IMG/VR virus record: IMGVR_UViG_3300028829_003504
Span: 124,001-188,000 of that record
Length of the DNA stretch: 64,000 nt
Direction: 5' to 3' (one strand)
Shown here piece by piece: positions 11,837 through 64,000 of the stretch. The position numbers and the translations under genes were made by a program. The notes below the pieces were generated by a model. That model was not told where the DNA came from, did no database searches, and was given only the letters and a program-made list of their open reading frames with translations. The first letter of the stretch is position 1. Each line of letters begins with the position of its first letter.

Positions 11837-12374
11837 TTATATGTACCTCTGTCTCGGCCGTCATCATCAATAAGCGCTCAATGCTATCTTGTGTGAGGTT
11901 GTTATTACGGGGTAGTACAGTAGTGCCATAAAAGGGAAGTTCCTTTAACGGTTGTGTTTTGATAGCATTAGCATGATTGTACATGATCATTTCATATATC
12001 TGAGTAATGCCTTCATTCTTAAATAAGGGGAGCACCTCGCATTGCGCCAAAACTGTCTCCATAATTAGCTTAGCTTTACTTAAATCCTCCAAGTGCTTAA
12101 CTAGAACTCCGTACTTAGCTTTAGCTTTCGTACTCTCAGCTTCGGCTTGATACAGGTCTTGGTGCTTAATATTATTATTTGCAACGGAGGAGTCGGCCAC
12201 AATATTCTTATGATAAGCAATTGCTGCTTGACCCATGGATATATCTCCAGCGACATCGCCCATAGAGGATTCTATATTTAATAATTCACGTACGGTGAAG
12301 TGATACACACTAGAGTCTAAGATGAAACTCTTAGCGGCTAGTAGATAGGATACGTGAGGTAGTTGATCAGGCAT
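11820..12374 (-). CDS. Hypothetical protein
   Basis: 184 aa, AAGGA RBS. Confidence 0.7.
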   Translation of the reverse strand: MPDQLPHVSYLLAAKSFILDSSVYHFTVRELLNIESSMGDVAGDISMGQAAIAYHKNIVADSSVANNNIKHQDLYQAEAESTKAKAKYGVLVKHLEDLSKAKLIMETVLAQCEVLPLFKNEGITQIYEMIMYNHANAIKTQPLKELPFYGTTVLPRNNNLTQDSIERLLMMTAETEVHIIERSK

Positions 12375-38911: not shown

Positions 38912-39295
38912 CTAATTACCCTTGAACGTTTGTTTGCAATTCAGGCACTCGTAGTATTCAAAATACGAATCGCATGAAGTCATCTTAGCGGGGCCTGAAC
39001 ATGACGAACAAGAGCCTGCCCAGTCATCACCTTCGTCATCGCTAATAATAGGTTCACCCGTCTGTTTGCGCCATATTTGAAACACGTAATCGAACACGGC
39101 ATCAATTTTTCTGAATTCGCGGAACTTAGTTGACTCAGAACCGTAGCTCGTCATCTCCAAACCGCATACACATAACGGATCGACACACGCTCCAGGCGTA
39201 TGGCTGCGAGGGTCATTAGGAACTAATTCCTCAAAAGGACCCAGCTTACTTGAGTCTTTACCGCATGAACATTTCCAATCAAAAATATCAGTCAT
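38912..39295 (-). CDS. Small Zn-ribbon protein
   Basis: CSCG, CVCG, CSSC, CLNC. Confidence 0.75.
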   Translation of the reverse strand: MTDIFDWKCSCGKDSSKLGPFEELVPNDPRSHTPGACVDPLCVCGLEMTSYGSESTKFREFRKIDAVFDYVFQIWRKQTGEPIISDDEGDDWAGSCSSCSGPAKMTSCDSYFEYYECLNCKQTFKGN

Positions 39296-39340
39296 AGTTT
39301 TTCCTTATTCATATAAGTTTGCTTGCTTCGTTATGGACTC

Positions 39341-39393
39341 ATTATAGCAGGTTAATACCTTTGATTATACTCTTAAATGAGCCGACATTAGGC
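39341..39393 (-). promoter_or_regulatory. TATAAT promoter with upstream GCCTA(A/G)TGCCG-like box (representative copy)
   Basis: Six copies with -10 at 7098, 20723, 20896, 25317, 35929, 39341 and plus-strand TAGGC 47-49 nt further on. Confidence 0.7.
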
Positions 39394-39418
39394 GACGAAA
39401 GATATATACCGCAGACAT

Positions 39419-39450
39419 AAAAAAACCACTGTACTCGAAAGCAAGTGGTT
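39419..39450 (-). terminator. Intrinsic terminator closing the ncRNA cassette
   Basis: AACCACT-TGCTTTCGAGTAC-AGTGGTT followed by TTTTT on the minus strand. Confidence 0.75.
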
Positions 39451-39456
39451 AGTGTT

Positions 39457-39569
39457 AGAATACATTGGGATAAAAAAGAACTGAGTATATTTCAACTCAG
39501 TCCAAAATATCAAAAACTGTTTAACTGATTGGGTTGATAGTTGTCTCACTTCCTATCCCAATGTATTCT
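39457..39569 (-). ncRNA. Structured RNA A (16-bp perfect closing stem, two inner hairpins)
   Basis: AGAATACATTGGGATA / TATCCCAATGTATTCT; inner ACTGAGT/ACTCAGT and TATCAA/TTGATA. Confidence 0.6.
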
Positions 39570-39576
39570 TAATAGG

Positions 39577-39647
39577 TTGAATACCGCATGAGGCAAAAAC
39601 GCGGCTAAACGATTGCTGGTAAATAAGGAGCCTCATGCTGTATTCAA
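39577..39647 (-). ncRNA. Structured RNA B (8+9 bp stem, 35-nt loop)
   Basis: TTGAATAC-x-GCATGAGGC / GCCTCATGC-x-GTATTCAA. Confidence 0.6.
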
Positions 39648-39653
39648 ATGGTC

Positions 39654-39706
39654 GCAACTCTAACTCCTTAAGAGGAACCCCATTCAACCGGAGGAGTTAG
39701 AGTTGC
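39654..39706 (-). ncRNA. Structured RNA C (15-bp perfect stem, 23-nt loop)
   Basis: GCAACTCTAACTCCT / AGGAGTTAGAGTTGC. Confidence 0.6.
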
Positions 39707-39741
39707 TTTTCTACTGTTCGAGTTACGAAGTCAAACAGCAA

Positions 39742-39822
39742 GAAAGTTTCAGGGTTATCTTACGGAAGGGAGAGCCTTGCTCACCTAACAGCCTTATCCT
39801 AACAAAGTTAAATGAAACTTTC
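39742..39822 (-). ncRNA. Structured RNA D (10-bp closing stem)
   Basis: GAAAGTTTCA / TGAAACTTTC; interior has TGTTAGG twice and AAGGC twice on the minus strand. Confidence 0.5.
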
Positions 39823-39863
39823 AGAGGCATGTCTAAATAGAACATGTAAGGAGATTCGTTTAA

Positions 39864-40156
39864 TATACTGTGGGTATTTCCCTAGTAGAAGAACTCAAGC
39901 TGTACCTTAGATACCACACGTTGGCCTTAGTGTTTGTGCTGGGTCTTTGAGTTTACATGCAAAGTGACCTGCCACACAGGTAAATAGTACAGCTCGGTAA
40001 TACGTTTGCGTTTAGTACGTATCGACATTCCTTTCCGATATTCTTACGTTGTGACATAGATACCGTGCGATAGGTAAATAGCCTTTCGTGCAATCGGAGT
40101 TCGCTTCTTCTAGACCCTTAGCGTCGAGTCCTGTTTAAGAAAATACACAAAGTATA
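39864..40156 (-). ncRNA. Structured RNA E (~290 nt, multibranched)
   Basis: Nested stems TATACT..GTATTT/AAATAC..AGTATA, CTAG.AGAAG.AACTC/GAGTT..CTTCT.CTAG, AGCTGTAC/GTACAGCT, ATACGT/ACGTAT. Confidence 0.6.
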
Positions 40157-40162
40157 CTAGTA

Positions 40163-40302
40163 TACTTTACTTAGTGCTACCCACTCAATGAGCTAAGATT
40201 AGGGCCTTGCGTGTGAACGGCGCGAACCTCTGTAGCTCTCTAAACAATGCCTCAACGCAACTTGGCATGGACAGATTAGAGTGAGTACCACTAAAGAAAG
40301 TA
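40163..40302 (-). ncRNA. Structured RNA F (~140 nt, long interrupted closing stem)
   Basis: Minus strand TACTTT-CT-TTAGTG-G-TACTCACTC pairs with GAGTGGGTA-G-CACTAA-GT-AAAGTA (a G-U pair favours minus); inner GAGCTA/TAGCTC and TGCC/GGCA. Confidence 0.6.
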
Positions 40303-40323
40303 GGATAGAGTCCTAGCGAGAAA

Positions 40324-40399
40324 TGGTGGGTCGTGCAAGATTCGAACTTGCGGCAAATTGGTTAAAAGCCAACTGCTCTACCAACTGAGCTAACGACCC
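40324..40399 (-). tRNA. tRNA-Lys(UUU)
   Basis: GGGTCGTTAGCTCAGTTGGTAGAGCAGTTGGCTTTTAACCAATTTGCCGCAAGTTCGAATCTTGCACGACCCACCA; 76 nt cloverleaf with encoded CCA. Confidence 0.97.
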
Positions 40400-40515
40400 A
40401 TAGTACAAACTATATATTAGTGTTTACAGTTTGTATTTTACATAAATACTGGAGGTATACGTACACCAGAATTAAACGTATTATATAGGCGTTGAACGTG
40501 TACGCGTTCTAGCCA

Positions 40516-40618
40516 TGTCCCTGACAGGAATTCGGGTTCTACCTGTAACTTACTATTTGAATTGAGGGTATCGCACCTCGCAGAAACAGCAATGCTCTAA
40601 GCTTTGAGCTATAGGAAC
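40516..40618 (-). ncRNA. tRNA-like RNA G (extended anticodon arm, enlarged T-loop, no CCA)
   Basis: Acceptor GTTCCT/AGGGAC, TA, D-arm GCTC-AAAGCTTA-GAGC, arm TTGCTGTTT/AAATAGTAA capped by GAGG/CCTC, T-stem ACAGG/CCTGT with 13-nt loop. Confidence 0.6.
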
Positions 40619-40644
40619 TTTTCGTTTAATCGCGTATAACAAAA

Positions 40645-40735
40645 TGAACAAGGCTGGAATCGATACCAGCAATGCCAGAATAGGGCTTACCGTAACACGA
40701 GCCTAACTGTTGGTTTATCTTAACTCTACTTGCTC
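40645..40735 (-). ncRNA. tRNA-like RNA H (acceptor and T arm intact, rest remodelled)
   Basis: Acceptor GAGCAAG/CTTGTTC then A; T-arm GCTGG-TATCGATT-CCAGC; starts about 11 nt after an AAACTGTAAA motif. Confidence 0.6.
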
Positions 40736-40746
40736 ACGTATTAATG

Positions 40747-40756
40747 TTTACAGTTT
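40747..40756 (-). promoter_or_regulatory. AAACTGTAAA promoter motif (representative copy)
   Basis: (A)AACTGTAAA core also at about 13840, 14406, 15843, 20829, 40423, 43485, 45353, 52079, 59585, 59608 (minus) and CTGTAAA near 56565, 62574, 62962, 63994 (plus), always oriented with the downstream gene. Confidence 0.7.
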
Positions 40757-40775
40757 TGTATTAAGTAGGATTTAC

Positions 40776-42296
40776 TTAATCTTCTTCGTCCGCAACTAGG
40801 TCACCTTTACCTGCACAGATAAGAGCGAAATTCTTGAGAGCTTTACCATTCGCCAATTGCTTCTTACACCAGAAGCGTATATCAACAGGCTTAACACCAA
40901 GTAAGTCGCAAGTTTCTTTTACCTGTCGCTTGTTACCTAACACCAGTGCTTTGAATGATAACCAAGAACACTTCTTAGCTCCGTGTAAGGGACAATCTTC
41001 GTGGAATTTCATATTACCACGAGTACCGCCTACTACGCCTAACATCTTCAAGAAGTTCCAAGTATCAAACACTGGATCTAGGCCTCTAGCCACACCATCA
41101 GCATCACGAATCCAGATACGTGCAAATGTATCTTGATACTGTAGCCCGCCAAGTTTGTTCTTGATAACTTTCAAGTTGATGAAACGATATTCGTCGTTTC
41201 CTTCGTGCTCAACAGACTTCTCATCCATAGTAGGACCTTTACCCCAACCTGAAGGTAGAGCACGGCTGGTAGATTTTATTCTACAGTCAGAGAAGAATTT
41301 CAACGCTTCACCTCCCGGCTCATACTCAGGATTACCAAACATAGTCGCAGGCTTCTGTCGTAATTGATTAACCCCAAATACTGTCATGCGTTTCTTCTTC
41401 ATAGAACCTTTAATGCGTTTAAGTTCTTTGGAGAACATCCGCGCTTGCAGGGCCATTGCATTGCTACCTTCGTCCGTATCTTCTTGCCTAGGTAACATAG
41501 CAGGATAGGAATCTAGTAGCGCGATTGCTTGCATCATACCATCTGCGGCAGGCACTTTAATTTTGTTATGCTTAGATAAGTACTTAGGGTCATATACAGA
41601 TTTGAATCGCTTGAGTAATTTCTTATCATGAGGGAACAAATAGTAATACTCTTTGCCTAATTTAACTTTATCAGGTAGTATTCTTTTTAGTCGATTATAG
41701 AATTCGAAAAATTCCTCGCCTCCATCAGTGGAGATATAATCAACGATCGGAGGTGTAATTTCCTCACCTGTATCGGGGTCTCTCTCTCCGAAGATTTGGC
41801 TCAACGTTTGCTTAACGCCTTGTGATTTTAGAATACTCTCAATGTAGTCAGGGCTACCTGAACCTTCGTAATCCCAGTAGCTGGCTTTACCCTCAAAGCC
41901 TTGTTTAATTATAGCTGACATTATTGTCATAGCTATTGTTGTCTTAGCGGATTGTTCACCACCAAAGATAGTGTACCAGCCACCTGATACGATACCACCG
42001 CCTATTAATAGATCAAGTGATACTAAACCTGTATGTAAACGAGGTTCGTCTGGGTCAAAAGCTGTACCTGCAAGACCCATCTTCTTCTTAACGTCTGTAA
42101 TGGATTCATCTAACATGTTTTCCAATAGAGATTTCGTTAAGGCGACTGCCTCTGAATGAGCGTTATCTGCAACTAAGGTAGCTTTATCGGAATTCTTGGC
42201 TTTCTTAGTTTTAGGAACATCAGCAACCTCAAGAGCCTTTTTGGCTCCTTTAGTTACTTTGGCTGATTTAGATCTAGTCGCTGTTTTAGTTGCCAT
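40776..42296 (-). CDS. recA: RecA/UvsX-like recombinase
   Basis: TGLVSLDLLIGGGI, Walker A GGEQSAKTT, DYE, LLDSY, ALQARMFS, VNQLR, MFGNPEYEPGGEALKFFSD, KNKLG. Confidence 0.93.
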   Translation of the reverse strand: MATKTATRSKSAKVTKGAKKALEVADVPKTKKAKNSDKATLVADNAHSEAVALTKSLLENMLDESITDVKKKMGLAGTAFDPDEPRLHTGLVSLDLLIGGGIVSGGWYTIFGGEQSAKTTIAMTIMSAIIKQGFEGKASYWDYEGSGSPDYIESILKSQGVKQTLSQIFGERDPDTGEEITPPIVDYISTDGGEEFFEFYNRLKRILPDKVKLGKEYYYLFPHDKKLLKRFKSVYDPKYLSKHNKIKVPAADGMMQAIALLDSYPAMLPRQEDTDEGSNAMALQARMFSKELKRIKGSMKKKRMTVFGVNQLRQKPATMFGNPEYEPGGEALKFFSDCRIKSTSRALPSGWGKGPTMDEKSVEHEGNDEYRFINLKVIKNKLGGLQYQDTFARIWIRDADGVARGLDPVFDTWNFLKMLGVVGGTRGNMKFHEDCPLHGAKKCSWLSFKALVLGNKRQVKETCDLLGVKPVDIRFWCKKQLANGKALKNFALICAGKGDLVADEED

Positions 42297-46622: not shown

Positions 46623-47510
46623 TTACAATAGTTCTTTTGGTATTTTACCTAACCGAACATCGTTATATATCGCAACTACTGATTTAGAGTTTCGTATATT
46701 CCAGTCAGAGCTAAGTAGTTTATCGCTAAAGTTGTCTGCGATGTTAGTATCACCTAATTGAAAGTTCTGGTGAGGCTTAACTATACATTTTTTCAAGTCA
46801 TCGGCAAAGGCTTCACGTAACTGGCGTTTCTGAGGCTTGTGCATCTCCTCGTAAGTCCCGACCGATAACATTTCTGCCCACACACGGCAAGTAGTGAAAG
46901 GTATGTGGAAGATTTTATCTTTCTTGTAAGCCAAGTTCTGGAAGAAAGTATTTTGAATCTTTACGTCACCGCGAAAGTTAGATTGCCAGTACTTCTTAAC
47001 AATATCTTTGGCGTGCATACTAGGTTTCTTAGCAGTGGCGAAGTAGATATCTGAATCAAAGCCAACTACAATATGCTTTGCTGGGCAGTTACGTACTGCT
47101 TGCATCATAGGCCAGATACATTCAATTGAACTTTTCTTAATAAGACCTAACTTACCGACAGCATGTTTAACCCAACTCTTTAGGTGTTTCTCGGAAGAGT
47201 TTAAAATAACTGGATTAAACTCCAAGCCGTAAACTTCTGAGGCATGTTTAGCTGCTTTGAAGTCGGTACTTTCATGTGTGTCTAAAGTAAACGAAGTGAT
47301 TAATGGGCGGTGTCCTAGAGCTAGCATGGCCCATAGTACCGCGTGGCTATCCATACCGCTAGACATAAATACGGAAGTACTTTGTGTAGTAGGTATAGGC
47401 CGCAGGGCACTCATTAATGCCATCTTCATGTCAGCAGGGCGAGAGCAGTTGTCCTCAAGCTCTTGTCTAAACTTCTCTCGCATCTTTTTTGTGCTTTCTG
47501 ATATAGCCAC
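46623..47510 (-). CDS. Asparagine-synthetase-like ATP-dependent amide ligase (synthetase domain only)
   Basis: PP-loop VFMSSGMDS, STDFKAA, VGFDSDIYF (cf. GEGADELF), IPF, K..LREAF, FQLG; no Ntn glutaminase domain. Confidence 0.8.
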   Translation of the reverse strand: MAISESTKKMREKFRQELEDNCSRPADMKMALMSALRPIPTTQSTSVFMSSGMDSHAVLWAMLALGHRPLITSFTLDTHESTDFKAAKHASEVYGLEFNPVILNSSEKHLKSWVKHAVGKLGLIKKSSIECIWPMMQAVRNCPAKHIVVGFDSDIYFATAKKPSMHAKDIVKKYWQSNFRGDVKIQNTFFQNLAYKKDKIFHIPFTTCRVWAEMLSVGTYEEMHKPQKRQLREAFADDLKKCIVKPHQNFQLGDTNIADNFSDKLLSSDWNIRNSKSVVAIYNDVRLGKIPKELL

Positions 47511-47520
47511 GCACAGTCTC

Positions 47521-48534
47521 CTATTTTACGTTAAAGAACTCGTCTGCTTTGACAAACGCCGTAAGCAACTCAGGTTCGCGTGTAGGATCGAATACAGGTA
47601 CGCTGTATTGCGCTTTCAGCTTATCACGTAAGGCAGCGTATACTTCGAAGCTTACTTCACGGCTAAATAAAGAGATTGCACCTAGACGTACATTAGGATT
47701 AGAAAAACGAGCAACCTGTAAGTTGAATCGAATTGTCTCATCTAAATCAATAGGCGTAGTAGTATCATTAATAATAGTACGGCTAGGATCGTGGCAGGCG
47801 ATCATCATATCAGGCTGTGAGCCTTGAATGATCGCATAAGTAGAACCGCCGAAACTAGGATGCAATATAGAGCCTTGACCTTCAACAACGTCAATGTGAT
47901 TATGGGGTGCAGAAGGTGTCTCTTGCTCAAGTGCCCCTACAATGAAATCAGCAGGTATCGTGTCGTTGGTAATGCCTGCACCGCTGATCAAGTAGCCTGT
48001 CTGGCCAGTTGCAACGAAACGACTGGAGTAACTTTGATTTAGCAATTCTTTCCATACTGATAAGGCTGTGAACTTCTTGCCTGATGCACAATCTGTACCG
48101 AAGGTAAGAATACGATAACCTGAACGTTCCTCGCCCGTACCTTTAATCCAATCGATAGGTTTATGTCGGAAATCGTATACTTCTATTCCGTTTAAGTCAC
48201 CAAACTCAGCAAGCAACACAGGCTCAAGTTTAGCATGAGAGCCTGATGCTATATTTAAGCCCAGGTCAATTGCTTCTTTACATACGCTAAGTACTCTAGA
48301 ATTGAAGTTACTTACTTCTCGAGGACTGAATCCGAGTAATAATGTTTTAGCGCCTGCTTCTTTAGCTTGCGCTAAACTCATATCAGGAAGACCTAGGTCG
48401 TAGGCTTCTTCGCTATCACGGTGTTGAGCCAGACATCGCTCAGGGGCCCAATCGACAATACCACATGCTGTCTTTACTTTACGGAATATAGTTTCGGAGC
48501 CTACATATATAATAAATGGATGTTGAATATTCAT
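47521..48534 (-). CDS. DUF1611 / DgcN-like P-loop protein (N-acetyltransferase family)
   Basis: Start MNIQHPF; KTACGIVDW.PE, DLGLPDMS, GAKTLLLG, GTDCASGKKFTAL, FVATGQTG, DFIVGA, VVEGQGSILHPSF, GSQPD...CH. Confidence 0.88.
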   Translation of the reverse strand: MNIQHPFIIYVGSETIFRKVKTACGIVDWAPERCLAQHRDSEEAYDLGLPDMSLAQAKEAGAKTLLLGFSPREVSNFNSRVLSVCKEAIDLGLNIASGSHAKLEPVLLAEFGDLNGIEVYDFRHKPIDWIKGTGEERSGYRILTFGTDCASGKKFTALSVWKELLNQSYSSRFVATGQTGYLISGAGITNDTIPADFIVGALEQETPSAPHNHIDVVEGQGSILHPSFGGSTYAIIQGSQPDMMIACHDPSRTIINDTTTPIDLDETIRFNLQVARFSNPNVRLGAISLFSREVSFEVYAALRDKLKAQYSVPVFDPTREPELLTAFVKADEFFNVK

Positions 48535-48548
48535 TTGTTTACCTTGTG

Positions 48549-49325
48549 TTATTTGATGCAGACCCAGCCTGCGAAGTTTAAATGACGATAGAAGCAATCG
48601 ATGTTCTTAAAGCCCGCAAGCGTTAACATTTCCTCATTGGCTCTAGCGGTTTGCGGAACAAGAACGCCTTCGAGTGAGGCTTTCTTGCGATCAATATCTT
48701 CGTAAGAATAACCATTACTGTGTTTCATTTTATGATACTCACCGACAAATAATTTGTTCAATCTACTACCACTACCTAGAATCTTCTCCACAAAGATAAA
48801 GGCTCCGCCGACAGGTAAGGCATCATAGATATTCTGAATGATTTCAAGTCGGTACTCTATAGGAGTAAACTGGATAGTTAGTATAGAAAGAATCAAACCA
48901 TGCTTCTCAGGCCAACCTATAGTTTGAGGACACTGAAAAATATGAGGCTGCCTCAAATCATCTCGATACACTTCAACGTTTCGGTTCTCAATGAAACGAT
49001 CGTCAAGCTCGGTCAGCATAGGCTCAGATATCTCAATAGCATAGCAGCCTATAGTAGGGTCTTTAGTGAACGGGGCGAGTGCTTCACCTCGACTAGCTCC
49101 TAGATCAAGGACAGTACGTAGACCGAAGTTTGAGCGGTTTTGCTCTGCTCTAGGTAAAGCATTCAATACGTCCATACCTAACTGGTAAGTCAGACTACGC
49201 ATCATGTCGTAGCTAGGTATACTACGTGATAGCATGTTATCAAAAGATTGTGCAACATCCTGGTTAAACTCCCACTTGTCGCCTGGGACGTGCGTATCTT
49301 CTCGGACTTTGGGTTCGTCTTTCAC
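48549..49325 (-). CDS. cmoA: CmoA-like carboxy-S-adenosylmethionine synthase
   Basis: WEFNQDVAQSFDNMLSRSIPSY (cf. FPDMIQRSVPGY), DLGASRG, TIQF, FVEK, K.SNGYS..DI.RKK.SLEGV, LNFAG. Confidence 0.88.
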   Translation of the reverse strand: MKDEPKVREDTHVPGDKWEFNQDVAQSFDNMLSRSIPSYDMMRSLTYQLGMDVLNALPRAEQNRSNFGLRTVLDLGASRGEALAPFTKDPTIGCYAIEISEPMLTELDDRFIENRNVEVYRDDLRQPHIFQCPQTIGWPEKHGLILSILTIQFTPIEYRLEIIQNIYDALPVGGAFIFVEKILGSGSRLNKLFVGEYHKMKHSNGYSYEDIDRKKASLEGVLVPQTARANEEMLTLAGFKNIDCFYRHLNFAGWVCIK

Positions 49326-62255: not shown

Positions 62256-63008
62256 ATCTAGATAATAAGAAATGATCTACAATAAACTGGTCATTTTTTG
62301 GACGGTCAGGTTAAATAATTTTAGTTTGAAAAACCCCCACGCTTAGATTGAGCATATACGTACGCCTGTGTAGCATATAGGGCAGTATAGGTCGACTAAA
62401 ACTAAATGGTTAATGTAATCAACCACTTACGATTTATTTTACACTAAAATTCAGGAAAAAGCCAACCCGGAATTGGCAGATATAGCATTCTACGTGGTTT
62501 AGGGTATAGCAGAGTACTTCTACCGTACGCCGGGGTCTAGATCGAGGTTTCTAAAAAGTTGGTTTAGGGCATTCTGTAAAGTGAGTGCAACGAGTATGAT
62601 GTTCTAAGCCATCAGAAACAAAAGACCACAAGGGTCCAAAGAGAGAAAAAAGAAAGCACGATCAGAACGTCGAGCGGGGAACCCGCTTGACGACAAACGC
62701 GATTAACAAAGAAACAATGCAAAACCCCGCAGACGATTACAACGATGCAAAGACCCTTGAGAAAACGGCGAGAAGGACCATTGCGCCCTTAAAAGGACCT
62801 TCGGTTTTACCTATTAAAAGGAGATCTAAGTACCTTGGTTCTCAATAGACTAATGGATCGTTTTCGGTAATAGGTTTATTGTTTATTGGGAGGTTTAGTT
62901 AAGAAAGAGATCGACCAAAGGTCTCCTCTTCCAACGGAGGTACCCTCCGACTATTATCTTTCTGTAAAGTATAATCATTAATATGATAATGATAATAGAG
63001 ATCTCCTT
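62256..63008. other. 750-nt non-coding structured region (origin or ncRNA candidate)
   Basis: No ORF; hairpins CGTCGAGCGGG/CCCGCTTGACG and CGGAGG/CCTCCG; long-range CAAGGGTC/GACCCTTG and ACCTATTA/TAATAGGT; A-rich plus strand. Confidence 0.5.
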
Positions 63009-64000
63009 ATGGCTATTTCCCGCGAGCCCCGCGCTGCCTTCCCAAAACTCACACTGCAAGCAACACGCTCCCAGATTAAAGTACTACGCAGTATGATAAA
63101 GCGTGCCTCTGAAATATACGTATGGACTATTGAGAAACACCAGTCTAACTACTTCACTGATGATAGCCAGCTACCTATTTACATCGACAGACTCTACGCT
63201 AATGATCCACTTGAATGGTTTCCCAGAGAACTTTTCTTAAACATCTTACGTCGAGGTAGAATGCACTACTTATCCTCGCCTGATGCAAAAGCCCAAGTCC
63301 CCAGAGGCTGGAGCTTACCTTTCCAATTCAAAGACTTCAAAGTACGGTCATTAGGTATAGACTTTACCTTACTGGAAGAAGTTCCCCACCTTGAGAAAAC
63401 CTTTATACCCTCAACTAATACAAACAAACAATTAAAGTTAAGCGAAGCCATGACCACTGGTTGGTGTCTTTTAAAGTACACTAAATTTAATGACCAGCTC
63501 CGTATTACACACGAACGATTCCGTAATATGGGCATGCGCTCCGACGTAGTTGCAGAAGATACTATGTGTTACGGATCTATCTCAATAAGCACCAAGGAGC
63601 TAAAGCTACTGGAGGACACAGCTAAGATAATAGGACCTGTCCGTAAGATTATTATTAATAGTATGTTCGACCACCACGAAGCAACTGGTAAATACCCAAC
63701 ATGGAATACTATTAAGAAAGAGTTACCCTTGATTAAGCACCAACTAGACTCGTCCCAGTTAGAGTTGTACTCTGCGGCCATCAGTGCCTCTTTCTATCAT
63801 ACGGCTATGCAGGCCTTACATAAATTTCATACTGAGGGCGATGCTAAGTTCTGGTACAGCGCCTTGGATAGAGTTAGCTTGTTAGTCGAGACCCCTGCCA
63901 AATACCTAGAGCGCGGTTCTATACACATACCTAAATTTGCACGTAGACCCTACATGACCTATAAGCGCCAGCTCTACTTAAACATAGAGGAAACTGTAAA
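63009..64000 (+). CDS. Partial ORF (>330 aa) resembling tandem TnpB N-terminal (WED/REC) domains
   Basis: ATG at 63009, open to the window end (MAISREPRAAFPKLTLQATRSQIKVL...); not in the ORF track. The ORF is clear; the TnpB resemblance is by eye. Confidence 0.6.
   Translation, partial: MAISREPRAAFPKLTLQATRSQIKVLRSMIKRASEIYVWTIEKHQSNYFTDDSQLPIYIDRLYANDPLEWFPRELFLNILRRGRMHYLSSPDAKAQVPRGWSLPFQFKDFKVRSLGIDFTLLEEVPHLEKTFIPSTNTNKQLKLSEAMTTGWCLLKYTKFNDQLRITHERFRNMGMRSDVVAEDTMCYGSISISTKELKLLEDTAKIIGPVRKIIINSMFDHHEATGKYPTWNTIKKELPLIKHQLDSSQLELYSAAISASFYHTAMQALHKFHTEGDAKFWYSALDRVSLLVETPAKYLERGSIHIPKFARRPYMTYKRQLYLNIEETV

What the first reader, a model, noticed from the sequence alone, without database searches (positions are those of the whole stretch)
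39419..40756. Self-contained 1.3 kb polycistronic cassette of structured non-coding RNAs
Seen: no ORF; two AAACTGTAAA promoters (40747, 40423) and a terminator (39419-39450), all on the minus strand. Between them, nearly end to end, lie two tRNA-like RNAs, a hairpin (40449-40512), tRNA-Lys and six elements closed by long stems with unrelated interiors. G-U pairs (element F, hairpin 39714-39738) favour the minus strand. It is not a CRISPR array because the stems differ in sequence. Inference: one transcript is processed into a panel of small RNAs, possibly decoys or antitoxin mimics against RNA-sensing defences, or antisense regulators. Annotation tools would report only the tRNA.
Basis: partly seen in the sequence, partly recalled or inferred. 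Interest (0 to 1): 0.85.

Follow-up and report, generated by a model that had tools for sequence, protein, structure and literature searches.

The report
Jumbo-phage island of structured small RNAs
A 1.5 kb gene-free stretch of an uncultured jumbo phage is a real transcription unit that carries one lysine tRNA plus several new, evolutionarily conserved folded RNAs (two derived from tRNAs), much like the unexplained "stable RNAs" next to phage T4's tRNA genes; their function is unknown.

Summary
The observation largely holds. Window 39296-40775 has no ORF in any frame or genetic code. It carries two copies of a recurrent phage promoter motif, a terminator and one tRNA-Lys(UUU). Rfam and ARAGORN recognise only the tRNA.

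GenBank phages and IMG/VR hold no homologue, but relatives from ENA and Logan do (L035, RecA 87% identical; L039). These conserve most modules at 70-80% nucleotide identity with no conserved reading frame. Base pairs are kept through compensatory and G.U changes that fit only the minus strand:
- tRNA-like 2
- element A (34 pairs, 7 compensatory)
- a ~273-nt central RNA (69 pairs, none broken between two phages)
- a 60-nt hairpin motif found in seven phage contigs
- hairpin F

The middle ones form one larger RNA. One closing stem is not conserved. One hairpin (G) is specific to this lineage.

Modules are gained, lost and interleaved with ORFs among relatives, so they are separate genes and not one large RNA. 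The closest analogue is T4's tRNA cluster with rnaC/rnaD. A decoy or anti-defence role is plausible but untested. I rate it a new variant of a known kind, of moderate to high interest.

The parts
40747..40756 (-). Promoter-like motif P1 (AAACTGTAAA), upstream of tRNA-like 1
   Evidence: 9 exact copies in the window against 0.36 expected, 8 of them on the minus strand. Contexts lie upstream of ORFs. The motif is conserved at the same place in L035.
40645..40733 (-). tRNA-like RNA 1. It has a 7-9 bp acceptor-like stem, a T-like arm with an 8-nt loop, one long variable arm, and an invariant 17-nt stretch where the D arm would be.
   Evidence: Fold. About 85% identical in L035, with one-sided G.U to G-C changes in the acceptor stem. 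The 3' two-thirds are present in L039. ARAGORN and Rfam do not call it.
40516..40617 (-). tRNA-like RNA 2. It has a 6-bp acceptor stem, a canonical 4-bp D arm, a hypervariable extended 'anticodon' arm, and a 5-bp T-like stem with an invariant 13-nt loop.
   Evidence: Three-phage alignment A8: the acceptor, D and T stems are 100% paired and each has one compensatory pair, while the long arm differs completely in sequence. Minus strand -27 kcal/mol (z -1.75) against plus strand -21.8 (z 0.09).
40449..40512 (-).
   Evidence: z -0.6. The 5' half is deleted in L035 and the 3' half is about 80% conserved.
40423..40432 (-). Promoter-like motif P2, 23 nt upstream of tRNA-Lys
   Evidence: The same motif precedes the tRNA-Lys array in L035. 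A CTGTAAA motif precedes tRNA-Met in L004.
40324..40399 (-). tRNA-Lys(UUU), with CCA encoded
   Evidence: ARAGORN. Rfam 75.4 bits. 92% identical to E. coli tRNA-Lys; the differences are the compensated 31-39 pair, the variable loop and one compensated T-stem pair.
40167..40303 (-). Element A: a ~130-nt RNA closed by a ~19-bp stem, with an invariant inner 10-bp helix. It always follows a tRNA or tRNA-like gene.
   Evidence: Alignment A9 (window, L035, L039): 34 pairs, 95.9% of cells paired, 7 pairs with compensatory change. Slid controls give 37-49% paired.
40149..40168 (-). Perfect 20-nt palindrome found only in this genome. It overlaps a sigma-70-like -10 hexamer.
   Evidence: Not conserved in L035.
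39874..40146 (-). Central ~273-nt multi-helix RNA (12 helices), closed by long-range 11-bp and 7-bp helices
   Evidence: Alignment A11 (window against L035, about 77% identical): 69 predicted pairs, all kept in both sequences. 7 pairs changed on both sides and 10 on one side through G.U. Slid controls give 33-44% paired. 15 of 138 cells are G.U, so the plus strand would lose them.
39737..39796 (-). D motif: a conserved 60-nt unit with a 6-bp covarying stem around an almost invariant 20-nt C/U-rich loop
   Evidence: Found in seven distinct phage contigs (window, L035, L039, L029, L043, L045, L046). 4 of 6 pairs are compensatory and 94% of cells are paired. The covariance model scores 67-78 bits, with one copy per locus.
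39712..39741 (-). Hairpin E, with two G.U pairs; specific to this genome
   Evidence: -10.8 kcal/mol on the minus strand against -5.3 on the plus strand. The stem is not kept in L035.
39654..39706 (-). Hairpin F: a 15-bp stem with a conserved 23-nt loop
   Evidence: z -6.0. In L035 the stem keeps all pairs through one compensatory change and three U.G changes, which would be A.C mismatches on the other strand. The loop core recurs in L039 on a different stem.
39577..39647 (-). Hairpin G: an 18-bp stem; lineage-specific insertion
   Evidence: z -5.2. Absent from L035, where about 10 unrelated bases take its place. No other copy in the window or in IMG/VR.
39455..39571 (-). Element H: a ~21-bp closing stem that encloses small hairpins and a terminator-like hairpin plus U6 (39478-39503)
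   Evidence: z -6.4. Terminator scan. Conserved in L035. L039 has the same architecture with an unrelated sequence (z -5.5).
39419..39450 (-). Intrinsic terminator (hairpin plus U7) that ends the unit
   Evidence: L035 and L039 have a terminator of different sequence at the same place, followed by a conserved block with TGCTATAAT for the next gene.

Best explanation
This is a dedicated non-coding 'stable-RNA island' of an uncultured ~262-kb jumbo phage of the NCTB / Yoloswag / AD1 group. It lies between the RecA/UvsX-like gene and a block of unknown genes.

Two phage-type promoters drive minus-strand transcription through:
- two tRNA-derived RNAs
- one genuine tRNA-Lys(UUU)
- a ~130-nt stem-closed RNA (element A)
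- a ~273-nt multi-helix RNA
- a small hairpin RNA with a conserved C/U-rich loop (D)
- several hairpins (E, F, G, H)

Transcription ends at tandem terminators.

Shown: the region is non-coding, and most modules are conserved. Their helices are maintained by selection at the RNA level on the minus strand. The modules are independent genes that are shuffled, multiplied or lost among relatives.

Inferred:
- The primary transcripts are cut into individual RNAs by host tRNA-processing enzymes (RNase P and Z at the tRNA and tRNA-like ends) and by RNase III at the 15-21 bp closing stems, as in the T4 tRNA/rnaC/rnaD operon.
- The tRNA-Lys backs up the host tRNA-Lys, which is the target of anticodon nucleases such as PrrC and PARIS.
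- The tRNA-derived RNAs keep the acceptor, D and T features but have a freely varying 'anticodon' arm. They may act as non-decoding tRNA mimics that bind tRNA-recognising proteins (nucleases, modification or processing enzymes).
- D and F present conserved C/U-rich loops suited to pairing with purine-rich (Shine-Dalgarno-like) sequences.
For: - Non-coding. Similarity to relatives appears as short fragments in all six frames, not in one frame.
- Transcription signals. The promoter motif and the terminator position are conserved in L035 and L039.
- Conservation and covariation: tRNA-like 2, element A, central RNA, D motif in 7 contigs, hairpin F, element H.
- Strand: the G.U-only changes fit the minus strand.
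- Modularity: in L035 a sigma-like gene and other ORFs sit between the modules, tRNA-Lys is present three times, and extra tRNA-like genes occur. L039 has a different order and no tRNA-Lys on the recovered contig. L036 and L013 lack the cassette near RecA.
- T4 parallel: tRNA-Arg, rnaD and rnaC lie end to end. rnaC has a canonical T arm inside an expanded fold and is also invisible to Rfam.
- Background on tRNA-Lys as a target and on phage tRNAs as counter-defence: PMC10264068, PMC11555353, PMC13096335.
Against: - There are no expression, end-mapping or stability data.
- Covariation rests on 2-3 sequences for most modules, and the tested structures were derived from those same alignments. Only the D motif has 7 sequences.
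- Hairpins E and G, the palindrome and the spacer are not conserved and may have no function.
- The host is unknown, so nothing shows that it carries a tRNA-Lys-targeting nuclease.
- The phage tRNA-Lys has an unchanged anticodon loop, so it gives no sign of nuclease evasion.
- No RNA ligase, RNA kinase or other RNA-related gene was found among the roughly 30 neighbouring ORFs screened. One PHROG 'tRNA methyltransferase' label matched only a generic methyltransferase domain in Pfam.
- The decoy and base-pairing roles are inference only.
Confidence: 0.6

Rival explanations
1. Decaying tRNA array. The tRNA-like elements are pseudogenes and the hairpins are neutral debris in a hyperplastic region. 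Only tRNA-Lys is functional.
For: tRNA-like 1 and 2 fail ARAGORN and Rfam. Hairpin G, hairpin E and the palindrome are genome-specific. The region varies widely among relatives.
Against: Helices are kept through compensatory and G.U changes at 70-80% identity, and loops are invariant. The D motif persists in phages whose RecA is only about 60-65% identical. Neutral decay would break pairs.
Confidence: 0.12
2. Trans-acting base-pairing regulators. D, F and perhaps others are sRNAs whose conserved C/U-rich loops pair with ribosome-binding sites of host or phage mRNAs. The tRNA context only provides processing and stability.
For: The conserved loops contain CUCUCC (D) and UUCCUCUU (F), and a conserved AUCUCC lies upstream of D. 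H ends in a hairpin plus U-run, like Hfq-type sRNAs.
Against: No specific target was identified. Anti-SD-like strings would match almost every gene. This does not explain the tRNA-like RNAs, element A or the central RNA.
Confidence: 0.15
3. DNA-level element: a replication origin, packaging or recombination site made of palindromes next to the recombination genes.
For: It lies beside the SSB and RecA genes. Three stems are perfect or near-perfect inverted repeats that fold equally well on both strands.
Against: Relatives keep the stems through G.U pairs that are mismatches in DNA and on the other strand. There is no GC-skew inflection. Promoters and terminators bracket the unit. The modules move independently among genomes.
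Confidence: 0.04
4. One large ornate RNA of the GOLLD / ROOL kind, which are often found next to phage tRNAs, rather than several small RNAs.
For: It is adjacent to a tRNA. The MFE model shows long-range helices, and the central part is a single ~273-nt domain.
Against: No Rfam match even at E = 10. In L035 and L039 the modules are separated by ORFs and promoters and occur in different combinations.
Confidence: 0.04

Closest known systems
Phage T4 tRNA gene cluster with stable RNAs rnaC (species 1) and rnaD (species 2)
   Same: The tRNA gene is followed end to end, on the same strand, by 120-140-nt structured RNAs with no ORF. T4 rnaC, like tRNA-like 1 and 2 here, combines a T arm and an acceptor-like closing stem with expanded other arms. 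Rfam models none of them. As far as I know, their function is unknown.
   Different: There is no sequence similarity. Here there is a single tRNA species (Lys), more and larger non-tRNA modules including a ~273-nt RNA, and the cassette has its own promoters and terminators in a jumbo phage of a different lineage.
Phage-encoded tRNAs as counter-defence against tRNA-cleaving immunity (PrrC, PARIS, Retron-Eco7, Septu)
   Same: The only canonical tRNA is Lys(UUU), the substrate of PrrC (PMC10264068). The relative L035 carries three diverged copies, which recalls copy-number gain of phage tRNA genes under immune pressure (PMC13096335).
   Different: No defence system or host is known here. The anticodon loop is identical to the E. 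coli type. The other RNAs of the cassette have no precedent in that literature.
Computationally predicted structured RNAs of phages (about 10,000 candidates from IMG/VR, PMC10690425)
   Same: They share the same kind of evidence (covariation in metagenomic phage contigs), and that set also includes many tRNA-like candidates.
   Different: I could not check whether these particular motifs are in that catalogue. Here several motifs are organised into one cassette.
Gammaherpesvirus MHV68 tRNA-miRNA encoded RNAs (from my own knowledge)
   Same: Viral tRNA-like modules are fused to stem-loops and released by host tRNA-processing enzymes.
   Different: That is a eukaryotic virus using Pol III and miRNA biology. 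It is only a functional analogy.

Membership tests
tRNA (Rfam RF00005) | Cloverleaf that scores above the family threshold, with a 7-nt anticodon loop | tested here: met
   This applies to 40324-40399 only: 75.4 bits against a gathering score of 29, anticodon UUU.
tRNA (Rfam RF00005), applied to tRNA-like 1 and 2 | Cloverleaf that scores above threshold; canonical anticodon and T loops | tested here: not met
   No hit even at E = 10. ARAGORN finds nothing even when introns are allowed and the threshold is lowered. The T-like loops have 8 and 13 nt, and the 'anticodon' arm is a long variable helix.
T4 rnaC / rnaD-type stable RNAs | Contiguous with tRNA genes on the same strand, non-coding, 100-150 nt and structured | tested here: met
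T4 rnaC / rnaD-type stable RNAs | Sequence homology to T4 rnaC or rnaD | tested here: not met
   nhmmer finds nothing. blastn finds only 10-14-nt chance or T-loop words.
T4 rnaC / rnaD-type stable RNAs | Accumulates as a stable RNA processed from the tRNA precursor | not testable with these tools
   No expression data exist for this uncultured phage.
CRISPR array or ToxI-like antitoxin repeat array | Regularly spaced direct or tandem repeats | tested here: not met
   Only short two-copy direct repeats and one 8-nt dimer were found.
GOLLD / ROOL / other large ornate RNAs, Y RNA, 6S, tmRNA, ribozymes, riboswitches (Rfam 15) | Match to the family covariance model | tested here: not met
   Only the tRNA passes. 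The other matches at E up to 10 are sub-threshold miRNA models. The same holds for the relatives.
Intrinsic (Rho-independent) terminator | GC-containing hairpin followed by a U run, at the end of a transcription unit | tested here: met
   39419-39450 (hairpin plus U7) and 39478-39503. The position is conserved in L035 and L039 with a different stem sequence.
Retron or other reverse-transcriptase-linked ncRNA | Adjacent reverse transcriptase gene | tested here: not met
   No RT domain was found in the neighbouring ORFs screened with Pfam and PHROGs.

The most novel reading that the evidence does not exclude
The cassette is an RNA-only anti-defence island. It would combine a spare tRNA-Lys with non-decoding tRNA mimics, whose 'anticodon' arms evolve freely, and with other folded RNAs. 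Together these would titrate or misdirect host tRNA-targeting or RNA-sensing immune nucleases. Modules would be swapped among jumbo phages in the way protein anti-defence genes are. This would also give a function to the T4 rnaC/rnaD class.
Probability: 0.2. Interest if true: 0.85.

Novelty: new variant of a known kind. Interest (0 to 1): 0.6.

Why it matters
Phage genomes are annotated almost entirely as proteins. Here one locus yields at least five RNA motifs that Rfam does not hold and that show signs of selection on their structure. They are organised like the T4 tRNA/stable-RNA cluster, whose non-tRNA products remain unexplained. The lineage shows rapid module turnover, tRNA-Lys multiplication and tRNA-derived RNAs with a hypervariable arm. 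That pattern is expected of arms-race loci, so the cassette offers a concrete set of candidates for RNA-based counter-defence or host take-over. The covariance models built from it could be used to search metagenomes for the same class.

Tried and rejected
- DNA searches of GenBank phages, near and distant, matched only the tRNA.
- RecA-guided loci from IMG/VR and JGI metagenomes gave only the same phage or relatives too distant to align.
- Exact-motif scans of IMG/VR returned the phage itself plus one chance hit inside a coding region of a high-GC phage (L038).
- The genome-contig scan for the D motif returned one chance hit in a Patescibacteria MAG (L047, stem not formed) and one 778-nt contig identical to L043.
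- Alternative genetic codes and small conserved ORFs are rejected.
- Replication origin is rejected.
- Hairpin G as a repeated mobile element: no second copy was found.
- The neighbouring 127-aa and 328-aa proteins gave no family, and the Atlas gave no usable lead.
- The covariance model of the D motif found no extra copies in the window or in the other loci searched.
- There is no sequence similarity to T4 rnaC/rnaD.
Full report
**Where the window comes from**

The window is part of IMGVR_UViG_3300028829_003504, a 261.8-kb contig. An identical copy exists in a JGI metagenome (L012).

Protein matches place it among jumbo phages related to Phage NCTB, Erwinia phage Yoloswag and Dickeya phage AD1. 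The matched proteins are an SSB (phrog_15004), a phage sigma factor, a RecA/UvsX-like recombinase and topoisomerase II. Almost all genes are on the minus strand.

**Checking the observation**

The stretch 39296-40775 lies between the RecA-like gene (40776-42296) and a 127-aa ORF (38912-39295). It has 24-33 stop codons in each of the six frames, and reassigning TAA, TAG or TGA opens no frame. It is the largest gene-free gap in the window.

ARAGORN and Rfam find only tRNA-Lys(UUU) at 40324-40399. Even at E = 10 nothing else credible appears.

The motif AAACTGTAAA occurs 9 times exactly against 0.36 expected. Eight copies are on the coding strand, typically in intergenic DNA upstream of ORFs.

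A hairpin plus U7 at 39419-39450 is a good intrinsic terminator. A second terminator-like hairpin lies at 39478-39503.

The 982 nt from the tRNA start to the terminator fold with z = -7.4 on the minus strand and -6.2 on the plus strand. Taken one by one:
- Only three 3' elements are strongly non-random (39654-39706, 39577-39647 and 39455-39571; z -5 to -6.4). As near-perfect inverted repeats they fold equally well on both strands.
- Element A (about 40167-40303) is moderate (z -2.2).

The single sequence therefore supports only part of the description and hardly fixes the strand.

**Finding relatives**

GenBank phages share only the tRNA. RecA-guided loci from IMG/VR and JGI were either the same phage or too distant.

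A search of the large protein collection with RecA found an 87%-identical protein on a 311-kb ENA contig (L035). A search with the downstream 328-aa protein found a 54%-identical homologue on Logan contigs (L039-L041).

L035 aligns to the cassette at 70-80% nucleotide identity in five blocks. L039 shares several modules.

Translated similarity between the cassettes is scattered over all six frames in 10-37-residue fragments, so the conservation is at the nucleotide level and not in an ORF.

**What the comparisons show, module by module**

*tRNA-like 1 (40645-40733).* It is nearly invariant in its 5' 'D-region' and in its T-like stem. One G.U in its acceptor stem becomes G-C in L035.

*tRNA-like 2 (40516-40617).* It has acceptor, D and T-like stems that are paired in all three phages, each with one compensatory pair, and an invariant 13-nt T-like loop. 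The long arm in the anticodon position has a completely different sequence in each phage.

*tRNA-Lys.* It is 92% identical to E. coli tRNA-Lys, with an unchanged anticodon loop. L035 has three diverged copies. The L039 contig has none.

*Element A.* It follows a tRNA or tRNA-like gene in all three phages. Of its 34 pairs, 95.9% of cells are paired and 7 pairs changed on both sides. Sliding the partners by 1-3 columns drops pairing to 37-49%.

All 69 pairs are kept in both phages, 7 by double changes and 10 by one-sided G.U changes. Slid controls give 33-44%.

*D region.* The 10-bp closing stem seen in the window is not conserved. Its interior holds a 60-nt motif found in seven distinct phage contigs. 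The motif has a 6-bp stem in five sequence versions (4 of 6 pairs compensatory) around an almost invariant 20-nt loop.

*Hairpin F.* In L035 it keeps all 15 pairs through one compensatory change and three U.G changes. Its loop core recurs in L039 on an unrelated stem.

*Element H.* It is conserved in L035. L039 has the same architecture with an unrelated sequence: a long closing stem around a strong hairpin plus U-run, followed by the true terminator.

*Not conserved.* Hairpin G is missing from L035 and has no other copy. Hairpin E and the 20-nt palindrome are also specific to this genome.

**Strand and level of selection**

The one-sided changes create G.U pairs, which would be A.C mismatches on the other strand or in DNA. 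Examples are three in hairpin F of L035, 15 of 138 cells in the central RNA, and 13 of 97 cells in element A.

The helices are therefore selected in RNA read from the window's minus strand, the same strand as the promoters, the terminator and the tRNA. A DNA-level role as an origin is also not supported by the GC skew, which runs straight through the region.

**Organisation**

The modules are separable genes. In L035, tRNA-like 1 and 2 are followed by a sigma-like gene and other ORFs before a second promoter, the three tRNA-Lys genes, element A, extra tRNA-like genes, a 90-aa ORF and then the central RNA, D, F and H.

L039 shows yet another order. L036 (RecA 83%) and L013 (65%) have no cassette near RecA.

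This excludes a single large ornate RNA. 'One polycistronic transcript' is a feature of this genome only.

**Comparison with known systems**

The closest known arrangement is the T4 tRNA cluster, where tRNA-Arg, rnaD (119 nt) and rnaC (139 nt) lie end to end. rnaC folds with a canonical T arm and an acceptor-like closing stem around expanded arms, and Rfam has no model for it. There is no sequence homology to the present RNAs.

tRNA-Lys(UUU) is the substrate of the anticodon nuclease PrrC (PMC10264068). Phage tRNAs, and gains in their copy number, are documented counter-defences (PMC11555353 and PMC13096335).

**Most likely mechanism (inference beyond the shown facts)**

- The transcripts from P1 and P2 are cut by RNase P and Z at the tRNA-like ends and by RNase III at the long closing stems.
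- tRNA-Lys supplements a host tRNA that immune nucleases target.
- The tRNA-derived RNAs act as non-decoding mimics for tRNA-binding proteins.
- D and F expose C/U-rich loops that could pair with purine-rich sites.

None of this could be tested. There are no expression data, the host is unknown, and the neighbouring proteins gave no clue.

**Limits**

Most modules rest on two or three sequences, and the tested structures were predicted from the same alignments. The controls with slid partners are therefore the fairer comparison. Only the D motif has a broader sample.

**Verdict**

The feature is real: a conserved cassette of RNA families that are new to Rfam. It is organised like a known but unexplained kind of phage locus.

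Noticed in passing
L001 (Phage NCTB) 11843-12078; L005 7573-7806; also L014, L015, L022: More distant relatives carry a different conserved ~235-nt ORF-free element directly after RecA. It is closed by a 17-22-bp stem and has conserved inner motifs, including one stem with a compensatory change (GTGAG/CTCAC against GTGGG/CCCAC). It has no similarity to the window's modules.
   Followed up: partly
L035 13828-13975 and 13982-14098; L039 1455-1571: These are tRNA genes with 41-58-nt insertions in the anticodon arm. Rfam tRNA scores are 44.3 and 30 bits, above threshold, and 21.7 bits for a third. One insertion is conserved at about 81% identity between two phages. They are too short for group I introns. 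None is present in the window.
   Followed up: partly
L035 13217-13538: There are three diverged tRNA-Lys(UUU) paralogues in tandem behind one promoter motif. They differ in the acceptor, anticodon and T stems but have an identical anticodon loop.
   Followed up: partly
L035 13742-13826; L039 1171-1256; L045 4287-4371: A third tRNA-like module has a 7-bp acceptor stem and a canonical-looking T arm but no normal D or anticodon arm. It is conserved in three phages and absent from the window.
   Followed up: no
window 62256-63265: This is a second ORF-free stretch of about 1 kb at a strand switch. It has no tRNA or Rfam hit and only weak inverted repeats.
   Followed up: partly
window 39300-39415; L035 15243-15340; L039 2520-2620: Just after the terminator lies a conserved block (TTTCGTCGCCTAA ... 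CGGCTCA) and an extended -10 element TGCTATAAT. This looks like a host-type promoter for the next gene and is kept in all three phages.
   Followed up: no
L004 / L016 9593-10630: A more distant relative has, after tRNA-Met and one small ORF, its own ~1-kb ORF-free stretch with several long-stem elements (arms of 12-25 nt) that ends in a terminator. The habit of keeping such an RNA island appears wider than the sequence families.
   Followed up: no
window 40776-42296 and proteins P0002, P0018, P0032, P0040: The RecA/UvsX-like gene of many relatives carries an intein (PF14890), sometimes with a homing-endonuclease domain. The window's copy (506 aa) has none.
   Followed up: no
L043 2944-3754 (= L048): In this relative the D motif lies about 180 nt upstream of tRNA-Met and tRNA-Arg(CCU). 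A further conserved block downstream of D is shared with L029.
   Followed up: no
window 46623-49325: This gene cluster encodes a methyltransferase (labelled tRNA methyltransferase by PHROGs but only a generic domain in Pfam), a DUF1611 P-loop protein and a weak Asn-synthase-like protein. It is conserved next to a DNA methylase in L035 and L036.
   Followed up: partly
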